Made by a program: the position numbers and the translations under genes. A stretch of DNA of 64,000 nucleotides, from IMG/VR virus record IMGVR_UViG_3300043418_000114, positions 248,001-312,000 of that record. One strand, given 5' to 3'. Under the pieces are notes generated by a model. It searched no databases, was not told where the DNA came from, and saw only the letters and a list, made by a program, of their open reading frames with translations. This document shows, one piece after another, positions 1 to 36,583 of this stretch (positions are counted from its first letter, which is position 1; each line of letters starts with the position of its first letter).

Positions 1-2
1 AT

Positions 3-362
3 CGTACCAGTTGGGAAAACATCAGTAGAGATTGGCTAAGTCGTTGGCCTGATATTCCATTCTTGGCAACAGTAAATGTAGGCAATGAAAAGATATTGTA
101 TTATGAGATTCTTGGCATGCAACGATATACTGACAGATTGCCACTAGATGATCCATTCAGACAAAATCAAAAGTCATTCTACTTGCATCCCAAATTAGTC
201 AAAGAAATGTACACGTGGCAATATGCATGGTATACCACTAACTATGTTGGATTTCAACGTGAAGAAATGGACATGGATGTTGAAGTCAAGAAACAAATTG
301 AAGACTACTGGGCTAAAGGATATTGGCTTGGCAAGGGCAACACTGACAGGACAACAGTATGA
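3..362 (+). CDS. hypothetical protein, 5'-truncated by the window edge; first visible gene of the fabF operon
   Basis: Frame 3 is open from position 3 (RTSWENISRDWLSRWPDIPFLATV...), so the track start at 63 is probably internal. The stop overlaps the next start (ATGA). Confidence 0.7.
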   Translation, partial: RTSWENISRDWLSRWPDIPFLATVNVGNEKILYYEILGMQRYTDRLPLDDPFRQNQKSFYLHPKLVKEMYTWQYAWYTTNYVGFQREEMDMDVEVKKQIEDYWAKGYWLGKGNTDRTTV

Positions 363-1561
363 CAGACATAGCCATTATTGGAGTAGGTATTGTTGACAGT
401 TTAGGTTTCAACAAAGACGAATGCTGGAACAACATGCTCAACGGTGTTGTTGGACTAAGCCCTAATGTTCTATTCAATAGAGAACAATATCCTATATCAA
501 AAATCAATAGTGTTCATAGCGTAGACTTGAACAAGATAACACTTGCCGAGTTCACTGACAAAGAAAGACAGAATATGGATCGCATCTTTTTGCTTTCCAT
601 GCATTCAATATTAGACTGTATCAAAGACAGTAATGTTACATCCACTGATGTTTCAATGATTGTAGGCATGACTAGTTCTATGAAGAATTTAGAACTAGAA
701 TCTTGGAACAGATTACTCAATAATAAACGCACTGCGCCTAGACAAATGTACTTTGCAATGCGTGATACTATCACATCGACAATCACTCGAATGTTTGGGT
801 ATACGGGTGCAACAAGTACCATGAGTAACATGTGTACTACATCTATAAGTTCGTTAGATTATGCTGTGCGTTTGTTAAACGACAACGACTGTGCATATTC
901 ATTAGTCACTGGAGTAGATTCGTTCGTACACCCTCTTGACATGTATGTTATGCAATCAATGGGTGCAACATGCATTGACGAAAATCCATTAACCAAACCA
1001 TTTGACGAGAATCGTAATGGTATCACATTAGGTGAAGGCAGTTGTTCATTCATGCTAACCACCTTAGCTAATGCTAAAAATAACAATCATAAAATCTATG
1101 GCATTATTAAGGGAATAGGTCACGGTACTGAATCTGTGCATGAAACTGACATGAGTACAGATGGTATTGGTTCACGCAATGCTATCAACATGGCACTAAG
1201 AAAAGCAAACTTGTCCAGTGCCGATATTGGATACGTTAATTGTCATGCAACAGGAACACCTCAAGGAGATACTGTCGAATATGATATTGTCAGTAGCATG
1301 TTCCCAAACGTAACAGTAGGTGCAAACAAATCAAATATCGGACACACCATGGGTGCGTGTGGTATGCTTGAGTTGTTCTACACGATCATGGCGTTGAATC
1401 GTCAGGTAGCACCACCTATCGCTAATTTAATTACCCCTATAGGTCATTCAATAAATATCCCAATGACCATGCAAACAATTGACACTATGTATGCCCTAAA
1501 GAATTCTTTTGGCTTTGGTGGCAAAAGTAGTTGCGTTGTCATTGAACGGGGAACATTATGA
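359..1561 (+). CDS. fabF: beta-ketoacyl-ACP synthase (FabF/FabB-like ketosynthase)
   Basis: N-terminal IAIIGVGIV, catalytic Cys (SNMCTTS), KPFDENRNGITLGEG, His (YVNCHATGTPQGD), His (KSNIGHTMGACG) and C-terminal KNSFGFGG. The Cys-His-His triad is intact. Confidence 0.93.
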   Translation: MTDIAIIGVGIVDSLGFNKDECWNNMLNGVVGLSPNVLFNREQYPISKINSVHSVDLNKITLAEFTDKERQNMDRIFLLSMHSILDCIKDSNVTSTDVSMIVGMTSSMKNLELESWNRLLNNKRTAPRQMYFAMRDTITSTITRMFGYTGATSTMSNMCTTSISSLDYAVRLLNDNDCAYSLVTGVDSFVHPLDMYVMQSMGATCIDENPLTKPFDENRNGITLGEGSCSFMLTTLANAKNNNHKIYGIIKGIGHGTESVHETDMSTDGIGSRNAINMALRKANLSSADIGYVNCHATGTPQGDTVEYDIVSSMFPNVTVGANKSNIGHTMGACGMLELFYTIMALNRQVAPPIANLITPIGHSINIPMTMQTIDTMYALKNSFGFGGKSSCVVIERGTL

Positions 1562-2337
1562 AGTTAGCAATGGTTTCAGCACATACAGTTGACTTTTACC
1601 ATTTTTTCAAAATTCAATATGCAATGATGCAGATGTATGACCCATTGGTTAAAATCACTGTAGCAAAGAGTGATACATTCGAGCAGTTCAATGAGAAGGT
1701 TGATTGGGTAGATTTAGGATATCCTGATTTCTTGCATCCAATGCATCGTAACTATACAACCAAATTCAACTTTGCACGTGCTCCGTTGGCACAATCAGTA
1801 GATGCAGACCGAGTAGCATGGGTAGATGCAGATATATTGCCTCTAGTTCCAACCGCTATTAGCAACTTCATGACTGTAAGTGACAAGCCCACAGTAGCAC
1901 ACAATGTATACATGAGCGATGAACAATATGATGGGTGGAATAGTCTTACTGAATGGTATGGAGTTGGTAAGTTACCATGTTATAATTGCGGATTGGTTGC
2001 GGCTAATCGTGATGATAGTTTTTGGAATGAATGGGCAGATGCTAAAAAGATGCTGTACCTAAGTAGACTCGATTACTTCTTAACGTATGAGGGTGATTAT
2101 CATTATGGAATCCCACTCAGAATGTTCTTCATTGACCAAATAGCACTTAATTATGTTATCAACAAAGATGTGAGTAGATTCCACTGTGTTGATAGTAGTA
2201 ATAACTGGCAACCACTTGATCCAAATGGCAACATGTTTAAAGACACAATCAGAATGCCATTCGATACAAAGATATTACATCTAAGTGGACCATCAAAGAA
2301 AAGTCTTTTAATAAACAAGGAAACAATAAATGTATAA
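1558..2337 (+). CDS. GT-A fold glycosyltransferase, GT8-like
   Basis: DxD motif (WVDADIL), YNCGLV (cf. YFNSGV), DQIALNYV (cf. DQDILN) and ILHLSG (cf. IIHFTG). Confidence 0.75.
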   Translation: MKLAMVSAHTVDFYHFFKIQYAMMQMYDPLVKITVAKSDTFEQFNEKVDWVDLGYPDFLHPMHRNYTTKFNFARAPLAQSVDADRVAWVDADILPLVPTAISNFMTVSDKPTVAHNVYMSDEQYDGWNSLTEWYGVGKLPCYNCGLVAANRDDSFWNEWADAKKMLYLSRLDYFLTYEGDYHYGIPLRMFFIDQIALNYVINKDVSRFHCVDSSNNWQPLDPNGNMFKDTIRMPFDTKILHLSGPSKKSLLINKETINV

Positions 2338-3094
2338 ACCATTTGATTTAACAGGTAAAGTAGTTGCTGTAGTGGGCGGCAATCAAGGCATTGGCTTTGG
2401 AGTAGCCGAAGCATTAGCACAAGCAGGAGCTACCGTTGTTATCGGTGGACGCAGAACAGAATGGAATCAAAAAGCCGCTGAGAAAATTGGTGGTGATTAT
2501 ATTGACGTTGATGCCACTGTAGAAGAATCAGTTGTCAACTATATGAATACTGTAGTTGAGCGTCATGGCAGATTAGATGCTTGTTTCGCTATCTTGGGTG
2601 GTGCAACAATTAGTCCTGCCCCATTCGACTTAACCCCGCTTGAATGGTGGGAGAATGATATTCAAAAGAATCTAACTAGTGTATACTTGTGTTTCCGTGA
2701 AGCATCTAATCACATGATTAAGCTAGGAAACGGCGGGTCATTGGTTAGTATTGCATCTATTACATCAATTGGATCTAGTGCATATATTAGTGCATATGCA
2801 AGTGCTAAAGCAGGATTGATTGGATTGACTAATTCATTGTGTCGCAAGCTAGGAGAGTACAAGATTCGTATCAATAGCATCATGTCGGGCGTTATTGACA
2901 CAAAAGAATCACATGCTAACTTACCTGAACAGTTTAGACAACACATGATTAACCACTCAGTGTTTAATCGTCTAGGTGCAGTAGAAGACTTTGGTGGGCT
3001 TGCTGTGTATCTAGCTAGTGATGCATCATCATATCATACCGCTGATGTTATGTTACTCGACGGTGGACAAACAAAGACAATCATGGTAGTATGA
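2330..3094 (+). CDS. short-chain dehydrogenase/reductase (FabG-like)
   Basis: Rossmann motif VVGGNQGIG, catalytic Ser (IASITS), YxxxK (YASAK), IRINSI and C-terminal DGG. Confidence 0.92.
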   Translation: MYKPFDLTGKVVAVVGGNQGIGFGVAEALAQAGATVVIGGRRTEWNQKAAEKIGGDYIDVDATVEESVVNYMNTVVERHGRLDACFAILGGATISPAPFDLTPLEWWENDIQKNLTSVYLCFREASNHMIKLGNGGSLVSIASITSIGSSAYISAYASAKAGLIGLTNSLCRKLGEYKIRINSIMSGVIDTKESHANLPEQFRQHMINHSVFNRLGAVEDFGGLAVYLASDASSYHTADVMLLDGGQTKTIMVV

Positions 3095-4032
3095 CATTAG
3101 AACCTACTGTTTGGTATGCTGGTCGCAACAACTATAAGAAGCATACGTATGAACCTGACTACTTTGGGCCAAAGATGGGAAGATTCACTACTGAGTTACT
3201 TGATGTTGAGACCAGAGACTTAACCAATATCCATGATATCATCGCTGATGACTTAGGAATAAGACAAACCAAAACTGTCGAGGTCTTATTCAGTGGCGGT
3301 ATGGATAGCGAATGTGTAATTCGCAGTTGCCTACACAGTAAGATTCCAGTTCGTGCATTGACTGCTAGATTCATGGTTCGTGGCTATCCAGTCAATACAC
3401 ATGACTTGTATTACGCTGAGAAATTTTGCAGAGAACACAACGTAGAGCAAGTGTTTGTTGACTTGGATGCAGTTACTTTCTTTGAGAGTGGCAAGTTCGC
3501 TGATTATATTGTGCCTTACAACATTTGGTATCCGCATGTCGCAGTACACTTTTGGATATTCGAACAAGCTACTGGATTCCCTGTATTAGGTGGAGAGTAT
3601 AGTTGGCCATGGGCGACTGAAAAGATTATAAGCCCTCATAGAATTCCATTCATGTCATACGATAGATTCATGCATGACCGAGGTATACACGGGATTGGCA
3701 GTATGCTAGGCAATAGTCTAGAAAGTAACTGTTTATTCATTAAGAATCATCTACAAATCGTCCGTAGTGCGCCAGCAGGGTATTACAGAGGAGAAGATGA
3801 TAAGATAACCATACTCAAGCAAGTATTGTACAAGCAAATGGGGTTTGGTGACTTAGAATTGCGTATGAAAAACTACGGATGGGATATGGTAGGCAAAGAC
3901 ATATTTGATTTATGGAAATACTGCGGGGATGTAGTTGATCAATACGGTGAATCCAAGGCAGTCATTAAATGGGGCAATTTTATTGCCGAAGCAATGAATG
4001 GTGCACCAGGAAGTAATGACAGACACATATGA
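3091..4032 (+). CDS. PP-loop (adenine nucleotide alpha-hydrolase-like) protein
   Basis: VLFSGGMDSE matches the SGGxDS PP-loop. DLYYAEKFC resembles the helix that follows in this superfamily. Confidence 0.6.
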   Translation: MTLEPTVWYAGRNNYKKHTYEPDYFGPKMGRFTTELLDVETRDLTNIHDIIADDLGIRQTKTVEVLFSGGMDSECVIRSCLHSKIPVRALTARFMVRGYPVNTHDLYYAEKFCREHNVEQVFVDLDAVTFFESGKFADYIVPYNIWYPHVAVHFWIFEQATGFPVLGGEYSWPWATEKIISPHRIPFMSYDRFMHDRGIHGIGSMLGNSLESNCLFIKNHLQIVRSAPAGYYRGEDDKITILKQVLYKQMGFGDLELRMKNYGWDMVGKDIFDLWKYCGDVVDQYGESKAVIKWGNFIAEAMNGAPGSNDRHI

Positions 4033-4562
4033 ACTACGATGCATTCAGTCATGGTCAGATGAAAAGCAAGTTATGGCTTGCTGAAAAACTCGAACCATAC
4101 CTTATAAACGAAAATATCGTAGTATTGGGTAGTTGGTATAATGTTACTGCATTGGTGTTAAAGTGTCGAAACTACAATGGCAAGATATACGGCATAGATA
4201 TAGACCCTGAAGTTAAATCAATTGCAGATAAGATTTGTAGTCAATGGGTTATAGAAGGCTCAGTTGAAAATATTACAGGTGATGCTAATAATATCACAGT
4301 ACCATATGATACCATTATTAACTGTAGTAGTGAGCATATGACTACTGAGTGGTTTGATGCGATTAAACCAGGGACACTCGTTTGTATTCAGTCTAGTGAT
4401 GTGACTGATCCTGAGTATCCCTGGTTAATTAAAACTGCTAGTGCCGATATAGAATCGTTCAAGCAAAAATATAACCTGTCAAAAGCCCTTTTCTGCGACA
4501 CACTGAGAATTCAGTACGGCGATTGGGGCTATGACAGGTTTATGTTAATTGGCGTTAAATAG
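4029..4562 (+). CDS. class I SAM-dependent methyltransferase-like protein
   Basis: Motif I-like VVLGSWY, acidic strand end GIDIDP, GDAN and IINCSSEHM. Confidence 0.65.
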   Translation: MNYDAFSHGQMKSKLWLAEKLEPYLINENIVVLGSWYNVTALVLKCRNYNGKIYGIDIDPEVKSIADKICSQWVIEGSVENITGDANNITVPYDTIINCSSEHMTTEWFDAIKPGTLVCIQSSDVTDPEYPWLIKTASADIESFKQKYNLSKALFCDTLRIQYGDWGYDRFMLIGVK

Positions 4563-4683
4563 CTTCGTAGTCTTCTTTACCAACGCCACATTCTGGACAG
4601 AGAAAATCTGCTGGCAATTCATCCCACTTGCCTTCTGTTTCTTCATCGTGGACATGTCCACAAACTACACATACGTGTTCCAT
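4555..4683 (-). CDS. rubredoxin, 42 aa (not in the ORF track)
   Basis: My translation is MEHVCVVCGHVHDEETEGKWDELPADFLCPECGVGKEDYEAI*. It has two CxxCG motifs and W..LP..F.CP.CG, and starts 1 nt after the rubrerythrin stop. Confidence 0.92.
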   Translation of the reverse strand: MEHVCVVCGHVHDEETEGKWDELPADFLCPECGVGKEDYEAI

Positions 4684-4684
4684 A

Positions 4685-5137
4685 TTACAATCCCTCCAAT
4701 ACTTTTTGATATGCTTCTGCGTGGCGCTTTTCTACTTTTGCAAGTGCCGCAAAACGCTTTTCTGCTTTCTGCAATACTTCTTTGAATTGGGCCGCATGTT
4801 CTTTTGATTCTTCAATCTGATGACGAGCTTCTTCTGCCGCGGCAATATTGCCTTCGAATTCTGCTTTCTCTTTGAATTCAGGATACATGACTTCAAACTC
4901 ATGTGTCTCGCCTTCAATCGCCATTTCTAAACAAGTGTGAGTGTCAGGCTTGCCAACTAACAATTCTAAATGTCCCCACGCATGTAGTAATTCTTGATCC
5001 GCGGTATGCTCGAAGTGTTTTGCAACATCCTCATAGCCTTCTTCTCGTGCGATTTTTGCAAAGTAACGATACTTTGTATGTGCTTGACTTTCACCCGCAA
5101 AAGCGGCTTGTAAATTCAATAGTGTCTCTGATGACAT
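4685..5137 (-). CDS. rbr: rubrerythrin (ferritin-like diiron domain, no fused rubredoxin)
   Basis: NLQAAFAGESQA, QELLHA (ExxH), GETHE..MYP and ESKEH / VEKRH. Strong SD AAGGAG upstream. Confidence 0.92.
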   Translation of the reverse strand: MSSETLLNLQAAFAGESQAHTKYRYFAKIAREEGYEDVAKHFEHTADQELLHAWGHLELLVGKPDTHTCLEMAIEGETHEFEVMYPEFKEKAEFEGNIAAAEEARHQIEESKEHAAQFKEVLQKAEKRFAALAKVEKRHAEAYQKVLEGL

Positions 5138-5148
5138 AGTTTTCTCCT

Positions 5149-5451
5149 TTAAATATCTTCTGTTGGCGTTAAACCATTACTGTGTTTGTCTGTAGTCTTC
5201 TCTACATCTTGAAACAATCGTTTCTCTTGTGCGGTGCGCTCTTTAAAAATTTTACGAGGATTACCACAAAGCATACATCCAGGTTGACCACAATCCATTG
5301 CGTGATGTTTTGCCAAACGATGAGGCTCTTTTACTGCTTTGTCTTTGTTAGTAAGACCGTGTGCTTTTGCAATCTTAACTTGCTTCTTCACAGCAGTTTC
5401 GTCACGAAAGCGACGACGACTATTCAAATATTTTGCTAACTCATTACTCAT
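5149..5451 (-). CDS. hypothetical basic protein with His/Cys cluster
   Basis: ORF contiguous with its neighbours; contains HHAMDCGQPGCMLCGNPRK. Confidence 0.7.
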   Translation of the reverse strand: MSNELAKYLNSRRRFRDETAVKKQVKIAKAHGLTNKDKAVKEPHRLAKHHAMDCGQPGCMLCGNPRKIFKERTAQEKRLFQDVEKTTDKHSNGLTPTEDI

Positions 5452-6026
5452 AACATTATGTCCTTATCGTTATCCTCTTTTACTAACCAACCTAACTTAA
5501 ACAAATCATTGCGTATCTCGTCGGTTACTACACTCTCTGAAACAACCGCTTTTGACTGTAGATAGTATTCTTGCTGTTCTTTAGTCATTTGCCTAAATTG
5601 ATCATCATCTACATCTTTTGCATCCCTGATGCCAGAACAGTACCAGTCGATGTAGTCACCCTTTTGTTGCATGTTAGCTATGATGCCACCAGCACTTCGC
5701 CAACTTGCACTCCATGTTTTGTCAGTCAATATAGGCCAAACATCATTCTTAATGAATTCGTTGTTGCATATTGCCGCATATAAATGCTGTGCATATACAT
5801 CGTCTGCACGTACTTTGTCAAGAATCCATTGCGTAGTTCTCAAATCGTATTCCATGTTGTCTGTTTGCCATTCAACTGTTGATTCAAGTTCTGCTCTACG
5901 TTGGTCCCATGTCTTGAAATAGTCAATCCTCTCCTGAGCTTCCTCAGCAGATGTTGTTCCTTCTTCAACACGTTTAAGTTCACAGTCAATGTTGAATTGA
6001 CCACGTGCTGGACTCTTGCTTAACAT
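5448..6026 (-). CDS. hypothetical protein
   Basis: 192-aa ORF packed between metK and the next gene (1-nt gap on one side, ATGA overlap on the other). Confidence 0.75.
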   Translation of the reverse strand: MLSKSPARGQFNIDCELKRVEEGTTSAEEAQERIDYFKTWDQRRAELESTVEWQTDNMEYDLRTTQWILDKVRADDVYAQHLYAAICNNEFIKNDVWPILTDKTWSASWRSAGGIIANMQQKGDYIDWYCSGIRDAKDVDDDQFRQMTKEQQEYYLQSKAVVSESVVTDEIRNDLFKLGWLVKEDNDKDIML

Positions 6027-6027
6027 A

Positions 6028-7128
6028 TTAGAATAAATCTACCTTCTCCCACGGTAAATCTTTCTTGCCAAAGTGACCGTAGTTAGTTGTACGACCGTAG
6101 ATTGGTTTGAACAAATCAAACCGCTCAATGATGCCTTTTGGTGTCAAGTCTACATTGTCTTGTACCCACTTAGTTAAGTCTCGTGCTTGTTTAGCATCGG
6201 CAGTTTCAATGTAGAAACTCATTGGATCTTTCATACCAATAGCATAACTGACTTGACATGTTGCCCAGTTAGCACGACCTGTTGCTACAATGTTCTTAGC
6301 AATATAGCGCATCATGTACGCCGCCGAGCGGTCAACTTTCGTAGGATCTTTACCACTAAATGCACCACCGCCATGGGGACTATAGCCACCATAAGTATCA
6401 ACAATGATTTTTCTTCCGGTGAGTCCAGTGTCACCATCAGGACCACCAATAACAAAACGCCCAGTAGGATTAATGTAATACTCAGTATCATTGTCTAGAT
6501 ATTGTGGTGGTAAAATTGCACGAATAACTTCTTTTACCGCTAAACGTAAAGAATTGATTTCAGTGTCTTCGGTGTGTTGAGTAGAACATACAACTTTAGC
6601 GATGCGTTTTGGTGTGCCATCGTCGTTATATTCAAACGTTACTTGACTCTTGGCATCTGGTCCTAGGCATGTCATTGTGCCATTCTTTCGAAGTCTTGTT
6701 AATTCTTCAACAATACGATGTGACCAGTAGATTGCACTTGGCATGTAATTGTCTGTCTCGTTACATGCGTAGCCAAACATTAGACCTTGATCACCTGCAC
6801 CAAAGTTATCAGTGCCCAACGCAATGTCTGCACTCTGACCATGTAGTAAATTGGTCACTTGAACAGTTCGCCAATTAAAGCCTTTTTGTTCGTAACCAAT
6901 ATTCTTAATCACTTTACGTACAGCGGCGTCGACCTCTACATCATGTAGAATGCCTTTATATTCGCCTGCCAACACGACTCGATTAGTAGTAACAAGAGTC
7001 TCACATGCACAACGTAGTGCAGAGTCTTCCTTTGACATTACTAAATCCAAAATTGCATCAGATATGGCATCTGCCACTTTATCTGGATGTCCTTCACTAA
7101 CACTCTCACTTGTAAACAAATAACTCAT
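6028..7128 (-). CDS. metK: S-adenosylmethionine synthetase
   Basis: FTSESVSEGHPDK, GAGDQG, GRFVIGGP.GDTGLTGRKIIVDTYGG and GGGAFSGKD. Confidence 0.98.
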   Translation of the reverse strand: MSYLFTSESVSEGHPDKVADAISDAILDLVMSKEDSALRCACETLVTTNRVVLAGEYKGILHDVEVDAAVRKVIKNIGYEQKGFNWRTVQVTNLLHGQSADIALGTDNFGAGDQGLMFGYACNETDNYMPSAIYWSHRIVEELTRLRKNGTMTCLGPDAKSQVTFEYNDDGTPKRIAKVVCSTQHTEDTEINSLRLAVKEVIRAILPPQYLDNDTEYYINPTGRFVIGGPDGDTGLTGRKIIVDTYGGYSPHGGGAFSGKDPTKVDRSAAYMMRYIAKNIVATGRANWATCQVSYAIGMKDPMSFYIETADAKQARDLTKWVQDNVDLTPKGIIERFDLFKPIYGRTTNYGHFGKKDLPWEKVDLF

Positions 7129-7173
7129 TGATTTCCTTTGTTAGATATTTACTATGATATCAGTCTGCGTGAA

Positions 7174-7746
7174 TTATTTCAACTTTTTCGGCTTAGTTTT
7201 CTTGGGAGCTATACGTTTTACTTTACTGTAAAACACGTGATTGCCGATAGTAGCAACGTGATAATATGGCCAAATAGGATTAACGCTTGTATTATGAAAA
7301 AACAACGTTGAATTTGGAACAACATCCACATAACGATTGTTTACCATAACATCATACGCTACCTGTTTTGCTTGCTGATATCGTTGGTTGTTGACTGGTT
7401 CTCCTTTGCCTTCGCATACCCAACTAAACTGACAAATTATCTTGTCTTGTATAGTTGTTCTTTGGTATACCACTTGACATGGATTACTTCCAAAACCGTG
7501 ACGTACTCTGTTCAATACTACTCTCGCAACTGCGGCTTGACCATCGATTGATTCATGACCAGCTTCGTAGTATATGTTCTTTGCCATACATGCAATTTGT
7601 TTTGCATCTATTTTAGTCAAAGAAATCTGTGCTTGTTCGCCGTAATTGTTAGCTGGAGGAGCATTTACTTTGCTCGTTCCTAGTAAACATATTACTGCAA
7701 TTAAACCCAAAAATAACATCTTGGGTAGGTTACTCAGTATTTGCAT
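7174..7746 (-). CDS. SleB/Hydrolase_2-family cell wall hydrolase with N-terminal hydrophobic segment
   Basis: CMAKNIYYEA (catalytic Glu), VVLNRV, QFSW and IGNHVFY. I moved the start to ATG 7746 because GAAAGGA lies just upstream. Confidence 0.88.
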   Translation of the reverse strand: MQILSNLPKMLFLGLIAVICLLGTSKVNAPPANNYGEQAQISLTKIDAKQIACMAKNIYYEAGHESIDGQAAVARVVLNRVRHGFGSNPCQVVYQRTTIQDKIICQFSWVCEGKGEPVNNQRYQQAKQVAYDVMVNNRYVDVVPNSTLFFHNTSVNPIWPYYHVATIGNHVFYSKVKRIAPKKTKPKKLK

Positions 7747-7805
7747 ACTTTTCCTTTCTACCATAGCATTATACTATGGCTTATTGATAAACCAAAGTAT
7801 ATTGG

Positions 7806-10166
7806 TTATTGCATCCAGCAATCACAGTTGCAACGGACGACTTGGTCTATTGCATCTGGCACGCTTAGTGTAGCAGGTGATAGAACACCTGATGTAAATG
7901 CAGTGCTTAGGTTTGGTGGAATCAGACTCTGATATTCAGAGCCAGCGAGACTACCTGGAACGTCGGTTTGGCCAACGTCTAATGGTGCACCAGGACCTGT
8001 TGGTGCAAATGGCGCATCGACGTTTCCAGTGCTTACCATGGTAGCTACCATGAATGCGTTGCCAACTGGATCAAAATAACCAGATGGAACAGGCACAACA
8101 GTTGTATCCATACCCGTTGCTGGGTCTGCTAACGTAACTGCTAATGTGGTAGGAGTAGGAGCGCCATTTGCTAATAGTGTCTTAACTTCTAATGGCGTCG
8201 ATTCAGGGATATTGTTATCTAAGTGAATGCCAATTTCCTGTAATCTTGCTTGGTTTCTTTCTTGTCTGCACATTCCAATTAGACTCTGACCGCCAGGCGT
8301 TGACGTATCACTAATAGCTTCTAACGTCTGTGCGCCCATATTTGGCTCAGTGTCTATTGCAAGTGCTGGCACTAAATCAATAAATCCAACTAATGATGTT
8401 GGGAATGCTCCCATTGCGGTAGGTGGACTTGAAATTTGTACGGGAACGATGCCATTGAATCTAGCACGTTGTTCGATTGTCAGTTGTGTACCAACTTGAT
8501 TCCATGCAGTATTCAAGTTGTTTGAAACAGTTGGGTGACTATTTAGAATGGCGGCAATTTCTGCATTCGCTTGATCTATGTAGCCTTGAACAACTGCATC
8601 TGAATAGGTAATGTTGTCAATAACTGCATCGTACAAGTTCTGATATATTGTTGACAAGTTAGCTGTTTGTAATTGCTGAATGTTACTATATATTGTGCTG
8701 ACTGGATAAGGCAAGCAAGACATAGCACCAAAGAAATCGCTGAATGTGTATGAGCCATTCGGGCCACTTCCTAATGCCATCGCACTCAATGCTTGCGTGG
8801 CAAGAGTAGTATCTGTTGGTACATTTGTACCTGCGACTTGATTCAGGCCAGCAGTAGTTTCAATGTTCGCTACAACCTGTGCAAGTTTCTCAATTGGAAT
8901 CGCATTTATATTCTTGATTTGGCGCATCGACACGCTGAATGCACCAGCACCTTGTGCTACATCATTTGGAAGAATTCCAACCAAATAGGATCCAAATCCT
9001 TCTGGCAATACTTGAGGGTTTACTGTTGCAGTTGATGTTAACGGTGCACCTGGTACACTAAGTGTACCTACTTGAGCTTTTACTGCTGGACTAGTAATAC
9101 TAGCGTGTAATCCACCTGCGTTATATATTGGATAGTAAGTCTTACTGTTTGTAGGCCCAGGTAGTGCATTGTAAAGTGGCACTGTTAGTGTTTGATAGCT
9201 ATTTGGAAATAGCATTATTGGATTCAACAAGTCTGCAAGAGTATTCAACCCTTTTGTTTTGCAGTTTAGTCCAGTTGTTACATCGATCAAGTCTACGCCA
9301 ATGATTATCAAGAATGCGGCGTAAATCTTTTGTTCTTGTTCAGTGGTAGCAGGTTTACCAGCCACTATCTGATTCACTTCACTTGGGGTAAGTCCACTGG
9401 CAATTAATGCAACACTCACCGATTGAGTTATTGCATTGTGTTTGTTCATCGTTGCCAACAAATTGGATGGCATGCCAAATGATGCAATCGTCTTCGTGTC
9501 GATTACTTTTCCAGATGCGACTAAGTCCTGTCCAAATACATTGGTTGCCAGACTTACACCGGCAATGTCTGCACTAATCAAATCATCCATGTTACTGAAT
9601 GTGCCGTTTAGGAAACCCAAACTCTGAACAACTGTGTTGATTGCACTATTTGAATAGTTAACATAGCTTTGTGCCATTGAAAAACTTGACACAAACTCTT
9701 TATAGTCAATTGACGAGTTCGATGGATTGTTGTTCCAGTTAAATTCGTTCCATGCTTGCAATGCAATCAAGCGAATGAAGCCATGTTGTGTGATTGCTTT
9801 GTTTGTATGATCATATGGCAACCACTTAGCTGTTTGACTTGCAGAATTTCCAGTATTGATTAAACCAGTGTACGTATAGGTTGGCGGCTTGCTATTACCC
9901 AATGCTGGAATAGAAGTTGCACCAATCGAAATAAGATTATCATACGTAGCATCTGACATTAAGCCAAGGGTATATGCCTGAAATATTGCATCAGTTAACT
10001 TACTGAGGCATGTATTCGTAACAATGCTACCTGGTGTATAATCATCATTAGTATGACTAGTTCCCACATATTGAGGAACTTGTTGATTGATTTTTAGACC
10101 TGTGTTTTGTAGTACAGACCCTAGTGCATTTACGCCTAGTGGACTTTGTTTGCCAGTATTGCTCAT
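7806..10166 (-). CDS. large hypothetical protein, probably virion-associated
   Basis: 786-aa ORF coupled (ATGA overlap) to the PAAR gene; S/T/A/N-rich; ends VRCNCDCWMQ. Confidence 0.7.
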   Translation of the reverse strand: MSNTGKQSPLGVNALGSVLQNTGLKINQQVPQYVGTSHTNDDYTPGSIVTNTCLSKLTDAIFQAYTLGLMSDATYDNLISIGATSIPALGNSKPPTYTYTGLINTGNSASQTAKWLPYDHTNKAITQHGFIRLIALQAWNEFNWNNNPSNSSIDYKEFVSSFSMAQSYVNYSNSAINTVVQSLGFLNGTFSNMDDLISADIAGVSLATNVFGQDLVASGKVIDTKTIASFGMPSNLLATMNKHNAITQSVSVALIASGLTPSEVNQIVAGKPATTEQEQKIYAAFLIIIGVDLIDVTTGLNCKTKGLNTLADLLNPIMLFPNSYQTLTVPLYNALPGPTNSKTYYPIYNAGGLHASITSPAVKAQVGTLSVPGAPLTSTATVNPQVLPEGFGSYLVGILPNDVAQGAGAFSVSMRQIKNINAIPIEKLAQVVANIETTAGLNQVAGTNVPTDTTLATQALSAMALGSGPNGSYTFSDFFGAMSCLPYPVSTIYSNIQQLQTANLSTIYQNLYDAVIDNITYSDAVVQGYIDQANAEIAAILNSHPTVSNNLNTAWNQVGTQLTIEQRARFNGIVPVQISSPPTAMGAFPTSLVGFIDLVPALAIDTEPNMGAQTLEAISDTSTPGGQSLIGMCRQERNQARLQEIGIHLDNNIPESTPLEVKTLLANGAPTPTTLAVTLADPATGMDTTVVPVPSGYFDPVGNAFMVATMVSTGNVDAPFAPTGPGAPLDVGQTDVPGSLAGSEYQSLIPPNLSTAFTSGVLSPATLSVPDAIDQVVRCNCDCWMQ

Positions 10167-35386: not shown

Positions 35387-36583
35387 TTATTGGAATGTCA
35401 AGTTCTGAACAGCGATTTCACCAACGTAGTCAGCGGCATTACCGAAGCTAGACGCTGTGTTAGTCAATTCGATGTAACCATAACGTGTCATGAATGATAC
35501 GACTGGTTCGAAACTTGTTGGATCTAGTACAACACCAGAACTCATCAATGGGATGTATGGGCAATAGAATGCCGCGGCATCAGTTTCGCTTGAACCCTTG
35601 TAACCAACCAATACTGGAGTAGTGTCTGGAGCATAAGAGTCAACGAACACGCGCATAGCGCCGTTCAATGTACCAACAAACTTAGTGTTTGTAGGAGCTT
35701 CGAATGTACCTTCTGTAGTACGAGCGAAAGCAGAAGTAGTTGCAGATTGCAATACTGTCAATGCGGCGCTAGAAACAACAGCCCAGTTACCTGCGCCACG
35801 ACGAGTGCGTTGAGCGATCAAGTTAGCAACACGGTTGATCAACACTGCCAAAGCGGCGTGTTCGTCACCAACGTATGTAGCTGTACCAGAAACGGTAGCT
35901 TGGTTGTATGTGTACTCAGTAGATGCTAGAGTACGTAGAGATAGCAAGATTTCTTGGTCGATTTCAGCAGTAATTTCTTGTGCTAGAGCGGCCATGATTT
36001 CTGCTTCTACGTCGATACCGTGCTGAGATTGTGCATCTTGCGCGGCTTCGAATGTCCAACGTGCTTGCAACTTACGTGACTTAGCTTCAACAGCTTGACG
36101 CAAGATTTGTACGCTGATTTGCTTACCACCGTTACCTTCTAGAGCCGCTGTATCGTTAGCAGTGTAAGAAGATGTAGATGTTGTACCATATGGAGTACGA
36201 GAATACGCTTGAGCGATCTTGAATGGTGACAATGCTTCTTCACCAGCTGTAACGCTAGTTTGTGCGGCAGAGTTGTCAGTCAAAGATTGAGCATAACGTA
36301 CACGTAGAGTGTGGATTTGACCAACTGGACCAGTCATTGGCTGAACGCCGACTAGTTCGTTAGCGATAACTGTAGGCATAACACGACGGATAACCGGTAG
36401 AATAACGCGGTTAAGAGTTGCAATGTTACCTGCAGTAGTTGTACCAGCTGATGATTCAGCCAATAGTTGCTTTTTGGTGTTTTCTAAGATAACACCCATT
36501 GTTGAGCGGCGTGTGCCCTTTAAGCCTTCAAGTAGGGCTTCTTTGGTCTCGTCCCAACGGCCTTCTAATAGAACTTTTGACAT
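35387..36583 (-). CDS. gp23: major capsid protein (T4 gp23-like)
   Basis: LPVIRRVMP...ELVGVQPMTGPVGQIHTLR, AKSRKLQARWTFEAAQD...HGID, EIDQEIL, YCPYIPL and TRYG. Confidence 0.97.
   Translation of the reverse strand: MSKVLLEGRWDETKEALLEGLKGTRRSTMGVILENTKKQLLAESSAGTTTAGNIATLNRVILPVIRRVMPTVIANELVGVQPMTGPVGQIHTLRVRYAQSLTDNSAAQTSVTAGEEALSPFKIAQAYSRTPYGTTSTSSYTANDTAALEGNGGKQISVQILRQAVEAKSRKLQARWTFEAAQDAQSQHGIDVEAEIMAALAQEITAEIDQEILLSLRTLASTEYTYNQATVSGTATYVGDEHAALAVLINRVANLIAQRTRRGAGNWAVVSSAALTVLQSATTSAFARTTEGTFEAPTNTKFVGTLNGAMRVFVDSYAPDTTPVLVGYKGSSETDAAAFYCPYIPLMSSGVVLDPTSFEPVVSFMTRYGYIELTNTASSFGNAADYVGEIAVQNLTFQ

What the first reader, a model, noticed from the sequence alone, without database searches (positions are those of the whole stretch)
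3..4562. Phage-encoded ketosynthase + glycosyltransferase + reductase + PP-loop + methyltransferase operon: a miniature biosynthetic cluster
Seen in sequence: six co-oriented genes joined by overlaps (ATGA at 359, 1558, 3091 and 4029; 8 nt at 2330), so they are probably translated as a unit. Established: FabF with a Cys-His-His triad and an SDR are the condensation and ketoreduction steps of type II fatty-acid/polyketide synthesis; GT8 enzymes are retaining GT-A transferases. Inference: a glycosyltransferase placed between the ketosynthase and the reductase, followed by an adenylating-type enzyme and a methyltransferase, looks like a pathway making or attaching an acylated, methylated glycan or glycolipid. 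It could modify the virion fibres or the host surface (superinfection exclusion) rather than supply bulk fatty acids. The phage MetK could supply SAM.
Basis: partly seen in the sequence, partly recalled or inferred. Interest (0 to 1): 0.8.

Follow-up and report, generated by a model that had tools for sequence, protein, structure and literature searches.

The report
Phage lipid-tailoring gene block
The six genes are real, but they are only the back half of a twelve-gene, gap-free block in an uncultured freshwater jumbo phage; the block is built around a virus-specific fatty-acid condensing enzyme and a membrane desaturase, and most likely remodels host envelope lipids rather than making one defined glycolipid.

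Summary
Observation: confirmed, but cut off by the window edge. All five overlaps exist. The string continues 5.1 kb upstream, giving 12 co-oriented genes with no intergenic gap.

Order of the block: DUF6492, Δ9 desaturase, 105-aa unknown, two AspH-type 2OG oxygenases, Baeyer-Villiger monooxygenase, GNAT, ketosynthase (KS), GT8-like GT-A, SDR, PP-loop enzyme, small methyltransferase-like protein.

Domain calls hold at superfamily level:
- The KS keeps the Cys-His-His triad, Lys335 and the GFGG loop.
- The PP-loop protein is a stand-alone asparagine-synthetase/β-lactam-synthetase-type adenylating enzyme, not QueC.

New findings:
- The KS belongs to a virus-only clade. 255 IMG/VR contigs encode a relative, and the 66 non-redundant KS in the tree form one clade (SH-aLRT 100).
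- The best cellular relative among 185,579 genomes is 25-30% identical.
- The commonest neighbour of the KS is a Δ9-type desaturase: present in 36 of 91 loci, adjacent in 20, with up to 8 paralogues.

The one-pathway reading is weak:
- GT, SDR, BVMO and DUF6492 accompany the KS only in close relatives (SDR also once, in L032).
- The PP-loop/methyltransferase pair occurs without a KS.
- No ACP was found in 74 kb.

Verdict: a modular, oxygen-dependent lipid/envelope-tailoring island. It is a new variant of known phage lipid auxiliary genes.

The parts
3..362 (+). 3' part (119 of 215 codons) of a GNAT-fold acyltransferase-like gene. The full gene is L001 9357-10004. It overlaps the KS start by ATGA.
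   Evidence: Full ORF. Atlas features point to GNAT. The AF2 model (pLDDT 69) has GNAT acetyltransferases as all top-50 PDB hits. hhalign gives probability 94.8 to the ~200-aa KS-neighbour family f47. Relatives reach Pfam Acetyltransf_1.
359..1561 (+). FabF-like beta-ketoacyl synthase (400 aa) of a virus-specific clade, with Cys159-His296-His329.
   Evidence: Pfam and NCBIfam hits. Alignment to B. subtilis FabF 4ls5. Invariant residues. Tree. Best cellular relative 25-30% identical.
1558..2337 (+). GT-A fold, GT8-like glycosyltransferase (259 aa) with DAD motifs at residues 82 and 90.
   Evidence: No Pfam family. Atlas structure search gives TM 0.78-0.81 to LPS/GT8-type transferases. Motifs.
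2330..3094 (+). Classical short-chain dehydrogenase/reductase (254 aa): GGNQGIG at residue 16, YASAK at residue 156.
   Evidence: adh_short_C2 3e-49 and PHROG 3142 'FabG-like' 6e-35. Below every NCBIfam cut-off, so the substrate is undefined. Motifs.
3091..4032 (+). Stand-alone PP-loop adenylating enzyme of the asparagine-synthetase B / beta-lactam-synthetase type (313 aa), with SGGMDS at residue 68 and no glutaminase domain.
   Evidence: AF2 model pLDDT 94. VIA Z 12-13 to AsnB, beta-lactam synthetase and carbapenam synthetase. AFDB clusters 'asparagine synthetase domain' TM 0.54-0.63. Motif invariant in 45 relatives.
4029..4562 (+). Small (177 aa) probable class I SAM-dependent methyltransferase. 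It is the conserved partner of the PP-loop enzyme.
   Evidence: Weak Pfam Methyltransf_25/31. The Atlas neighbour's model aligns with TM 0.78-0.81 to class I methyltransferases. A 53% identical homologue sits directly upstream of the PP-loop gene in L093, which has no KS.
4555..4683 (-). Rubredoxin (42 aa), convergent with the block. Its 3' end overlaps the last 8 nt of the methyltransferase gene. It is a possible electron carrier for the di-iron enzymes or for rubrerythrin.
   Evidence: ORF. Pfam Rubredoxin 5e-09, above cut-off. Same arrangement in L008.
4685..5137 (-). Rubrerythrin (150 aa), a peroxide-detoxifying di-iron protein flanking the block.
   Evidence: Pfam Rubrerythrin 7e-18. In the relatives L002 and L093 this position holds AhpC plus a CMD/AhpD-like protein instead.
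6028..7128 (-). S-adenosylmethionine synthetase MetK (context only; opposite strand).
   Evidence: Three Pfam MetK domains, 7e-33 to 2e-58.

Best explanation
The finding is the downstream half of a 12-gene, gap-free, same-strand block (L001 4504-14204, equal to window -5138 to 4562). It lies in the accessory island of a freshwater jumbo myophage. I read the block as a modular toolkit that tailors host envelope lipids during infection, not as one assembly line.

Core (partly shown, partly inferred):
- A virus-specific FabF-like ketosynthase keeps every catalytic and gating residue and the Arg127/Lys128 position of the FabF basic patch that I take to be ACP-docking. It should therefore condense host acyl-ACP with malonyl-ACP; no phage ACP was found.
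- A membrane Δ9 (SCD/DesC-type) di-iron desaturase introduces cis double bonds.
- Together these two enzymes set acyl chain length and unsaturation. A GNAT-fold acyltransferase next to the KS may hand acyl groups on.

Phage-specific additions (function inferred only):
- Two AspH/LpxO-family 2OG dioxygenases, a type I Baeyer-Villiger monooxygenase and an SDR would hydroxylate or oxidise.
- Two GT-A transferases, with a divergent dTDP-glucose 4,6-dehydratase upstream, would add sugar.
- A stand-alone AsnB-type adenylating enzyme and its small methyltransferase partner form an independently mobile pair whose substrate need not be the same.
- The convergent rubredoxin and rubrerythrin plausibly feed electrons to, or clean up after, the four O2-dependent enzymes.
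For: - Gap-free 12-gene string.
- KS catalytic set C163/H303/H340/K335/D311/E314/T270/GFGG (E. coli numbering) conserved in the 29-member clade alignment: T270 in 27 of 29, the rest in all 29. K/R is kept at 127/128.
- 255 IMG/VR contigs encode a KS relative. All 66 non-redundant phage KS form one clade apart from canonical FabF. Cellular genomes reach only 25-30% identity.
- The desaturase has HRLLTH/HTTHH/HNNHH boxes and hydrophobic helices. The His residues are invariant in 24 phage paralogues.
- The desaturase family is the top KS neighbour: 36 of 91 loci, adjacent in 20.
- GNAT, AspH-like, PP-loop and methyltransferase families recur with the KS in other lineages. L013 shares six of the twelve families.
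- The PP-loop + methyltransferase pair occurs without a KS.
- AspH assignment; BVMO motif FKGKIIHTQYWD.
- Freshwater pelagimyophages were already reported to carry fabF plus stearoyl-CoA desaturase (PMC7029224). Cyanophage DesC-type desaturases are active on C16 lipids (PMC5776448).
Against: - No enzyme here has a demonstrated substrate.
- AspH-family oxygenases, GNATs, SDRs and methyltransferases act on many non-lipid substrates.
- Overlapping starts are common in phage genomes and do not prove a shared pathway.
- The full 12-gene order is conserved only in close relatives (KS 63-81% identical), which could reflect recent common descent.
- ACP use is inferred from conserved residues only.
- The rest of the 364-kb genome was not searched.
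- The RNA evidence is inconclusive.
Confidence: 0.5

Rival explanations
1. One dedicated pathway. All twelve genes cooperate to build a single acylated, oxidised, methylated glycolipid or glycan, which decorates the host surface or the virion.
For: - Unbroken translationally coupled string.
- Identical order in three phages with KS identity down to 63%.
- Two GT-A enzymes plus a divergent dTDP-glucose 4,6-dehydratase.
- Six of the twelve families co-occur again, in a different order, in L013.
- An ACP gene lies next to a PP-loop homologue in one related contig.
Against: - GT259, BVMO, DUF6492 and the 105-aa protein are never seen with the KS outside the close relatives; the SDR is seen once, in L032.
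- The PP-loop + methyltransferase pair stands alone in L093.
- The 54%-identical KS of L009 sits with none of the other genes.
- No ACP, acyltransferase, dehydratase, thioesterase or aminotransferase in 74 kb.
- Identity to L008 varies from 47% to 97% along the block, which suggests mosaic history.
Confidence: 0.2
2. A string of unrelated auxiliary genes. The genes are co-transcribed only because phage genomes are compact. The KS and desaturase tune membrane fluidity, while the oxygenases, GNAT, GTs and the PP-loop/methyltransferase pair modify unrelated targets such as proteins, nucleic acids or cell-wall sugars.
For: - In other phages the KS lies among classic auxiliary genes: Hsp20, ClpS, bilin reductase, AdoMet decarboxylase, nucleotidase, peroxiredoxin.
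- The AspH-like family is reported as core to pelagimyophages irrespective of lipid genes.
- The PP-loop family is very large (at least 143 clusters) and is mostly found elsewhere.
Against: - The same families (desaturase, GNAT, AspH-like, PP-loop, methyltransferase) re-assemble around the KS in several unrelated phage lineages.
- Related jumbo phages place desaturases, P450, radical-SAM and Fe-S assembly genes around the PP-loop gene.
- This is more clustering than random assortment predicts, although no background rate was computed.
Confidence: 0.2
3. A phage-encoded small-molecule (polyketide- or fatty-acid-derived) product. KS, SDR, BVMO and the tailoring enzymes would make a diffusible ester, lactone or amide used for signalling or antagonism.
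For: The combination of KS, ketoreductase-type SDR, BVMO, adenylating enzyme, methyltransferase and GNAT is typical tailoring chemistry. In L009 a malonyl-CoA-decarboxylase-like GNAT sits just upstream of the KS, which resembles GNAT-type chain initiation.
Against: - No ACP, chain-length factor, thioesterase or cyclase was found.
- The KS is FabF-like rather than PKS-like in all profile searches.
- Its most constant partner is an integral-membrane acyl desaturase.
Confidence: 0.07
4. Plain booster of bulk fatty-acid synthesis by a recently captured host FabF and FabG.
For: Viral 'fabF' and 'fabG' are routinely listed as fatty-acid auxiliary genes. The SDR hits PHROG 3142 'FabG-like'.
Against: - The KS scores 222 bits against the FabF equivalog model, whose cut-off is 494.
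- It forms a virus-only clade.
- The best cellular identity is 25-30%.
- The SDR is below all FabG cut-offs.
Confidence: 0.03

Closest known systems
FabF (KAS II) of bacterial type II fatty-acid synthesis
   Same: Same fold and both Pfam domains. Cys-His-His triad, Lys335, Asp311/Glu314, Thr270 and the GFGG loop with the gating Phe are present, as are basic residues at 127/128.
   Different: - Only about 25-30% identical to any cellular KS.
- Far below the FabF equivalog cut-off.
- Forms a separate virus-only clade.
- Clade-typical substitutions at Ile108 (mostly Gly/Ser), Arg206 (Gly), Asp265 (Glu) and Asn404 (Ser/Cys).
- No adjacent acpP, fabD or fabG-equivalog genes.
Phage lipid auxiliary genes: cyanophage DesC-type desaturase (vFAD) and the fabF + stearoyl-CoA desaturase pair noted in freshwater pelagimyophages
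   Same: A Δ9-type His-box desaturase and a FabF-like gene carried by aquatic myophages, side by side.
   Different: Those reports list single genes or a pair. Here the pair is embedded in a 12-gene overlapping block with two AspH-like oxygenases, a BVMO, a GNAT, two GT-A enzymes, an SDR, an AsnB-type enzyme and a methyltransferase. The virus-only status of the KS clade and the arrays of up to 8 desaturase paralogues were not described in the papers I could read.
Asparagine synthetase B / beta-lactam synthetase / carbapenam synthetase (PP-loop synthetase domain)
   Same: SGGxDS PP-loop. About 245-258 residues superpose at Z 12-13.
   Different: No N-terminal glutaminase domain. Sequence identity is 10-12%, and Pfam and NCBIfam see only a sub-threshold QueC/NAD-synthetase-like N-terminus. 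Always paired with a ~180-aa methyltransferase-like protein.
GT8 LPS glycosyltransferases (WaaI/WaaJ type; comparison from my own knowledge of the family)
   Same: GT-A fold with DxD motifs. The best structural neighbours are annotated as LPS/GT8 transferases.
   Different: No Pfam PF01501 hit at E <= 0.1. Donor, acceptor and stereochemistry are unknown.
Type II PKS/FAS biosynthetic gene clusters
   Same: A stand-alone KS next to a ketoreductase-type SDR and tailoring enzymes.
   Different: No ACP, chain-length factor, acyltransferase, dehydratase, cyclase or thioesterase in 74 kb. The KS is FabF-like, not PKS-like.

Membership tests
Elongating beta-ketoacyl-ACP synthase (FabF/KAS II) | Both thiolase-fold KS domains (Pfam PF00109 + PF02801) | tested here: met
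   8.2e-25 and 5.8e-28, above cut-offs.
Elongating beta-ketoacyl-ACP synthase (FabF/KAS II) | Cys-His-His triad plus Lys335, Asp311, Glu314, Thr270 and the GFGG gating loop | tested here: met
   All present in the window protein. All 29 clade members keep them, except Thr270, which 27 of 29 keep.
Elongating beta-ketoacyl-ACP synthase (FabF/KAS II) | Scores as a FabF equivalog / groups with canonical FabF | tested here: not met
   TIGR03150 gives 222 bits against a cut-off of 493.75. Separate clade, SH-aLRT 100. At most 30% identity to cellular KS.
Elongating beta-ketoacyl-ACP synthase (FabF/KAS II) | Uses acyl-ACP and malonyl-ACP | not testable with these tools
   Only indirect: K/R kept at positions 127/128. 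No phage ACP found in 74 kb.
GT8 glycosyltransferase | Match to the family profile (PF01501) | tested here: not met
   No hit at E <= 0.1.
GT8 glycosyltransferase | GT-A fold with DxD motif | tested here: met
   TM 0.78-0.81 to LPS/GT8-annotated clusters. DAD at residues 82 and 90.
FabG (3-oxoacyl-ACP reductase) | Classical SDR with glycine-rich NAD(P)-binding motif (TGxxxGxG type) and Ser-Tyr-Lys | tested here: met
   adh_short_C2 3e-49. GGNQGIG at residue 16 and YASAK at residue 156.
FabG (3-oxoacyl-ACP reductase) | Reaches a FabG equivalog cut-off | tested here: not met
   Best FabG model 141 bits against a cut-off of 296. Sugar dehydrogenase models score as high.
PP-loop ATP pyrophosphatase, AsnB/beta-lactam-synthetase type | SGGxDS motif and synthetase-domain fold | tested here: met
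   Motif invariant in 45 sequences. Z 12-13 over about 250 residues. AFDB 'asparagine synthetase domain' clusters, TM up to 0.63.
PP-loop ATP pyrophosphatase, AsnB/beta-lactam-synthetase type | N-terminal class II glutaminase domain | tested here: not met
   The protein is 313 aa and aligns only to the C-terminal part, about residues 117-540, of the ~500-residue targets.
QueC (7-cyano-7-deazaguanine synthase) | Reaches the family cut-off | tested here: not met
   PF06508 18.7 bits against 22. TIGR00364 16.6 against 150. QueC ranks 36th by structure, Z 8.2.
Class I SAM-dependent methyltransferase | Profile match or Rossmann-like methyltransferase fold with motif I and an acidic residue after strand 2 | tested here: inconclusive
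   Methyltransf_25 E 0.04, below cut-off. The fold is seen only through the model of a 0.99-scoring Atlas neighbour. VLGS at residue 32 and GIDID at residue 55 are compatible.
Delta-9 membrane acyl desaturase (SCD/DesC type), upstream gene L001 5403-6179 | HxxxxH, HxxHH, HxxHH boxes, transmembrane segments, PF00487 | tested here: met
   PF00487 4e-17. Boxes at residues 56, 93 and 221 and hydrophobic segments. His residues invariant or nearly so in 24 paralogues. Regiospecificity itself was not tested.
Type I Baeyer-Villiger monooxygenase, upstream gene L001 7942-9360 | FxGxxxHxxxW[P/D] fingerprint between two dinucleotide-binding motifs (fingerprint recalled from the literature) | tested here: met
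   FKGKIIHTQYWD, GAGLAGIG and GSGATA read. Pfam Pyr_redox_3 and FMO-like.
Type II PKS/FAS gene cluster | Cluster-encoded ACP and partner enzymes (AT, DH/CLF, TE) | tested here: not met
   phmmer with E. coli AcpP against all stop-to-stop ORFs of the window plus the upstream 9.6 kb gave nothing below E 3. Pfam scans of all block genes show none. The remaining ~290 kb of the genome was not examined.

The most novel reading that the evidence does not exclude
Aquatic phages carry an ancient, virus-only ketosynthase lineage. Together with arrays of up to eight Δ9-type desaturase paralogues, AspH-type oxygenases, a GNAT and (in this jumbo phage) a BVMO, glycosyltransferases and an amide-forming enzyme, it would constitute a genuine virus-encoded biosynthetic pathway. 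Its product would be an unusual polyunsaturated, oxygenated or glycosylated lipid that the host cannot make. That would be a first bacteriophage lipid biosynthetic gene cluster, analogous to the sphingolipid pathway of coccolithoviruses.
Probability: 0.2. Interest if true: 0.85.

Novelty: new variant of a known kind. Interest (0 to 1): 0.6.

Why it matters
Phage lipid genes have so far been treated as single borrowed host genes. This analysis shows three things:
- The ketosynthase is a virus-specific lineage, present on hundreds of uncultured phage contigs.
- It is habitually coupled to membrane desaturases.
- In one jumbo-phage group it is embedded in a 12-gene oxygen-dependent tailoring block.

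If the block rewrites host envelope lipids or LPS, it would be a new way for phages to control membrane fluidity, lysis timing or superinfection. It would also be a source of new condensing, desaturating and amide-forming enzymes. The idea can be tested directly by heterologous expression and lipidomics.

Tried and rejected
- Megablast of window 1-8000 against 50,697 phage records found nothing.
- tblastn of the KS against the same records gave only hits of about 22-27% over the full length (one 34% partial hit), mostly to small or bacterial-like records. No isolate phage in that collection carries this clade.
- The promoter/terminator scan equalled the shuffled expectation, so it is uninformative.
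- The idea that the 105-aa protein is an ACP was rejected. It has no PP-binding hit, its sequence does not resemble an ACP, and phmmer with AcpP was negative. Its function stays unknown.
- The QueC / 7-deazaguanine DNA-modification reading of the PP-loop gene was rejected. The fold is closer to AsnB and beta-lactam synthetase, and no other queuosine-pathway gene turned up in the Pfam-scanned genes of the block and its immediate flanks.
- The LuxI-type acyl-homoserine-lactone synthase idea for the GNAT was rejected. All top-50 structural hits are ordinary N-acetyltransferases.
- The ~210-aa protein downstream of the KS in L005/L010/L013 (family f63) and the MCD-like protein of L009 showed no detectable homology to the window's GNAT.
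- The first all-against-all hhalign run timed out.
- The desaturase alignment was too divergent for a collection scan, so no background frequency of desaturases in viral contigs was obtained.
- Single-sequence PDB search of the PP-loop protein gave only noise.
- Literature searches for jumbo or huge phages with these genes returned nothing relevant.

Full report
**What is there**

The window comes from a 364,247-bp IMG/VR viral contig (IMGVR_UViG_3300043418_000114). Locus L001 covers it with 9,642 bases of extra upstream sequence, so L001 position = window position + 9642. The major capsid protein (window 35387-36583, minus strand) is about 66% identical to those of jumbo myophages such as Vibrio phage 2.275.O and Pseudomonas phage PA5oct. 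This is therefore an uncultured jumbo phage. Sequencing runs that hold it are freshwater metagenomes.

ATGA overlaps lie at 359, 1558, 3091 and 4029, and an 8-nt overlap at 2330.

**The block is larger than the finding**

The first, truncated ORF (3-362) is the end of a 215-codon gene. Upstream of it lie six more plus-strand genes joined by the same 4- or 8-nt overlaps. The block runs from L001 4504 to 14204: twelve genes with no intergenic base. In order, the genes are:

1. DUF6492 protein, 300 aa (Pfam 7e-10).
2. FA_desaturase, 258 aa.
3. A 105-aa protein of unknown function.
4. A 274-aa protein (AspH-type oxygenase, see below).
5. A 212-aa protein (AspH-type oxygenase, see below).
6. A 472-aa flavin monooxygenase.
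7. The 215-aa protein (GNAT fold, see below).
8. KS.
9. The 259-aa 'GT'.
10. SDR.
11. PP-loop protein.
12. The 177-aa 'methyltransferase'.

A dTDP-glucose 4,6-dehydratase homologue is divergently transcribed just upstream. Downstream, convergent with the block, are an unlisted 42-aa rubredoxin (4555-4683, minus strand; Pfam 5e-09), whose end overlaps the methyltransferase gene by 8 nt, and a rubrerythrin.

**Gene-by-gene evidence**

*Ketosynthase*
- It has both KS Pfam domains and aligns end to end with FabF structures.
- In a 29-member alignment spanning 30-100% identity, Cys159, His296, His329, the Lys before the second His and the GFGG loop are invariant.
- Mapped onto E. coli FabF, C163, H303, H340, K335, D311, E314 and F400 are conserved throughout and T270 in 27 of 29. 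Positions 127/128 of FabF's basic patch, which I take to be ACP-docking, stay K/R.
- Ile108 becomes mostly Gly/Ser, Arg206 becomes Gly, and Asn404 becomes Ser/Cys.
- It should be an active decarboxylating condensing enzyme. However, it scores 222 bits against a FabF equivalog cut-off of 494.

*Desaturase*
- It has HRLLTH, HTTHH and HNNHH boxes and hydrophobic segments. This is the pattern of Δ9 SCD/DesC enzymes as described for cyanophage vFADs (PMC5776448).
- The histidines are invariant or nearly so in 24 phage paralogues.

*Flavin monooxygenase*
- It carries FKGKIIHTQYWD between two dinucleotide-binding motifs. From my own knowledge this is the type I Baeyer-Villiger fingerprint; the sequence was read.

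*The 274-aa and 212-aa proteins*
- A profile of the 274-aa protein's family found 1,556 relatives. Of 46 sequences scanned (the window protein plus 45 of the relatives found), 34 match Pfam Asp_Arg_Hydrox. The profile also hits proline hydroxylase structures.
- The 212-aa protein matches the same profile (hhalign probability 92.7).
- The block therefore has two AspH/LpxO-family 2OG oxygenases.

*The 215-aa protein*
- It is a GNAT fold. Evidence: Atlas features; a moderate AF2 model whose 50 best PDB matches are all GNATs; and relatives that reach Pfam Acetyltransf_1.

*The 259-aa protein*
- It has no Pfam hit. The ESM Atlas's stored model of this protein aligns to LPS/GT8-type GT-A transferases at TM 0.78-0.81, and it has DAD motifs.

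*SDR*
- It is a classical SDR but lies below every FabG or sugar-dehydrogenase cut-off.

*PP-loop protein*
- It was modelled at pLDDT 94.
- It superposes best on the synthetase domains of asparagine synthetase B, beta-lactam synthetase and carbapenam synthetase (Z 12-13), ahead of LarE and NAD synthetase (about 9.5) and QueC (8.2).
- Its nearest AlphaFold clusters are stand-alone 'asparagine synthetase domain' proteins.
- It is an adenylating, amide-forming type of enzyme without a glutaminase domain.

*The 177-aa protein*
- It is only probably a class I methyltransferase.

**The ketosynthase is a virus lineage**

- IMG/VR holds 255 contigs encoding a relative, of which 80 were fetched.
- In a maximum-likelihood tree of 117 sequences, all 66 non-redundant phage KS form one clade (SH-aLRT 100, stem 0.57). 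That clade is separate from the E. coli FabF group and from the other, presumably cellular, database KS.
- A scan of one genome for each of 185,579 bacterial and archaeal species used patterns taken from the clade's most conserved stretches. Its best 80 matches were only 25-30% identical.
- No record in the INPHARED phage collection exceeded about 27% over the full length.

Caveats: the tree used a quick search with a single-matrix model. The comparison set was chosen by similarity to the query.

**What travels with the ketosynthase**

I called ORFs in 91 KS-bearing loci and clustered them. I then re-searched with iterated HMMs.

| Family | Loci (of 93 searched: 91 KS-bearing plus L092 and L093) | Notes |
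|---|---|---|
| Δ9-type desaturase | 36 of the 91 KS-bearing (37 with L092) | Directly adjacent in 20; up to 8 paralogues per locus (L013) |
| GNAT | 13 | hhalign 94.8 to the ~200-aa family next to the KS in T4-like contigs |
| AspH-like oxygenase | 12 | |
| PP-loop enzyme | 8 | |
| Methyltransferase | 8 | |
| SDR | 6 | |
| GT259, BVMO | 5 each | Only in L001-L004 and L008 (KS 63-100% identical) |
| 212-aa protein, 105-aa protein, DUF6492 | 4 each | Only in L001-L003 and L008 (KS 63-100% identical) |

Further observations:
- The next KS relative (L009, 54% identical) has none of these families. It does have a malonyl-CoA-decarboxylase-like GNAT just upstream.
- In many marine or freshwater T4-like contigs the KS sits among ordinary auxiliary genes: Hsp20, ClpS, bilin reductase, AdoMet decarboxylase, nucleotidase, peroxiredoxin. 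This matches the published note that freshwater pelagimyophages carry fabF, a stearoyl-CoA desaturase, speH and a 2OG oxygenase (PMC7029224).
- The PP-loop family is large, with at least 143 clusters at 90% identity.
- In L093 and in a 159-kb contig, a ~182-aa gene lies directly upstream of the PP-loop gene with no KS in sight. The L093 copy is 53% identical to the methyltransferase-like protein; the other contig's copy could not be compared because no DNA was held.
- In a related 345-kb phage the PP-loop gene lies among two desaturases, a P450, a radical-SAM enzyme and Fe-S assembly genes.
- Identity between L001 and L008 varies from 47% (DUF6492) to 97% (212-aa protein) along the block.

**Interpretation**

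The firm core is the pairing of a virus-specific elongating KS with a membrane Δ9 desaturase. These two activities set acyl chain length and unsaturation. A looser shell of GNAT, AspH-type oxygenase, AsnB-type enzyme and methyltransferase re-assembles around that core in several lineages. This jumbo-phage group adds a BVMO, an SDR, two GT-A enzymes and a sugar dehydratase.

Four of the twelve enzymes need O2 and reducing power. Peroxide-handling genes always flank the island: rubredoxin plus rubrerythrin here and in L008, and AhpC plus a CMD protein in L002 and L093.

I therefore favour a modular, oxygen-dependent lipid/envelope-tailoring island that draws on the host's ACP-bound acyl pool (confidence about 0.5). 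The alternatives are:
- a single glycolipid/glycan assembly line (0.2);
- a mere string of unrelated auxiliary genes (0.2);
- a diffusible polyketide-like product (0.07);
- bulk fatty-acid boosting by a captured host gene (0.03).

No ACP, acyltransferase, dehydratase, thioesterase or aminotransferase was found in the 74 kb examined. The other ~290 kb of the genome were not available to me.

**Expression**

A freshwater metatranscriptome run (X3) contains contigs identical to parts of the KS, GT, SDR and PP-loop genes, including one that bridges the SDR/PP-loop junction. Another contig crosses the convergent methyltransferase/rubredoxin/rubrerythrin junction. DNA carry-over cannot be excluded, and contigs carry no strand. 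This is compatible with transcription in nature but does not prove co-transcription. Consensus promoter and terminator scans were at chance level.

**Novelty and score**

Phage fabF-like and desaturase genes are known as auxiliary metabolic genes. The papers I could search do not describe three things:
- the virus-only KS clade;
- its habitual coupling to, and the multiplication of, desaturases;
- the 12-gene overlapping block.

I rate this a new variant of a known kind, interest 0.6. The most novel reading not excluded is a true phage-encoded lipid biosynthetic pathway making a lipid the host cannot make. I give that about a 0.2 chance.

Noticed in passing
window 4555-4683 (-): An unlisted 42-aa rubredoxin gene (CxxC...CxxC; Pfam 5e-09) lies between the methyltransferase gene and rubrerythrin. 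Its 3' end overlaps the methyltransferase gene's last 8 nt, tail to tail. It could be the electron carrier for the membrane di-iron desaturase or for rubrerythrin.
   Followed up: partly
L013 (8 copies), L010 (6), L014 (5), L032 (4): Some phage loci carry arrays of four to eight paralogous Δ9-type His-box desaturases around the KS, interleaved with AspH-like oxygenases. L010 also has a Rieske protein, an ATP-grasp enzyme and PP-loop paralogues. This is far more than membrane-fluidity tuning would seem to need.
   Followed up: partly
L093 6985-8474; ERZ1426690 contig; window 3091-4562: The PP-loop gene is paired with a ~180-aa gene in either order, without any KS. The L093 partner is a 53% identical homologue of the methyltransferase-like protein; the ERZ1426690 partner (182 aa) could not be compared because no DNA was held. 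In the ERZ1426690 contig an 86-aa PP-binding (ACP-like) gene and a Methyltransf_21 gene lie right behind the pair.
   Followed up: partly
L009 6200-6631: In the closest outgroup phage (KS 54% identical), the only notable neighbour of the KS is a 143-aa protein matching the catalytic GNAT-fold domain of malonyl-CoA decarboxylase (Pfam MCD 4.5e-07). This hints at a self-priming KS/decarboxylase pair.
   Followed up: no
L002 14167-15263; L093 9022-10601; window 4555-5137; L057-L066 family f10: Peroxide-handling genes flank the KS or PP-loop island in several different phages: rubredoxin plus rubrerythrin, AhpC plus a CMD/AhpD-like protein, or a peroxiredoxin. They look interchangeable at the same position.
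   Followed up: no
15 loci, e.g. L025 4199-4609, L091; window 6028-7128 (-): SAM-related genes recur near the KS. AdoMet decarboxylase (family f4) appears in 15 loci of two different architectures, and MetK appears in this phage and in L002.
   Followed up: no
L001 versus L008, whole block: Protein identity between the two phages swings from 47-57% (DUF6492, GNAT, methyltransferase) and 63% (KS) to 91-97% (desaturase, both AspH-like proteins, SDR) within one syntenic block. This suggests recombination or very uneven constraint.
   Followed up: no
L092 (345-kb phage contig) 517-7430: A related jumbo phage has, next to its PP-loop gene, a cytochrome P450, two desaturases, two GNAT-like ~200-aa proteins, a B12-binding radical-SAM enzyme and NifU/Fe-S assembly genes. 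This is another oxygenase-rich variant of the same island.
   Followed up: no
window 1-6000, RNA run X3: A freshwater metatranscriptome holds contigs 100% identical to much of the block and to the convergent genes, so the phage was present, and possibly active, in an independent sample. DNA run X4 holds a 95-99% identical variant.
   Followed up: partly
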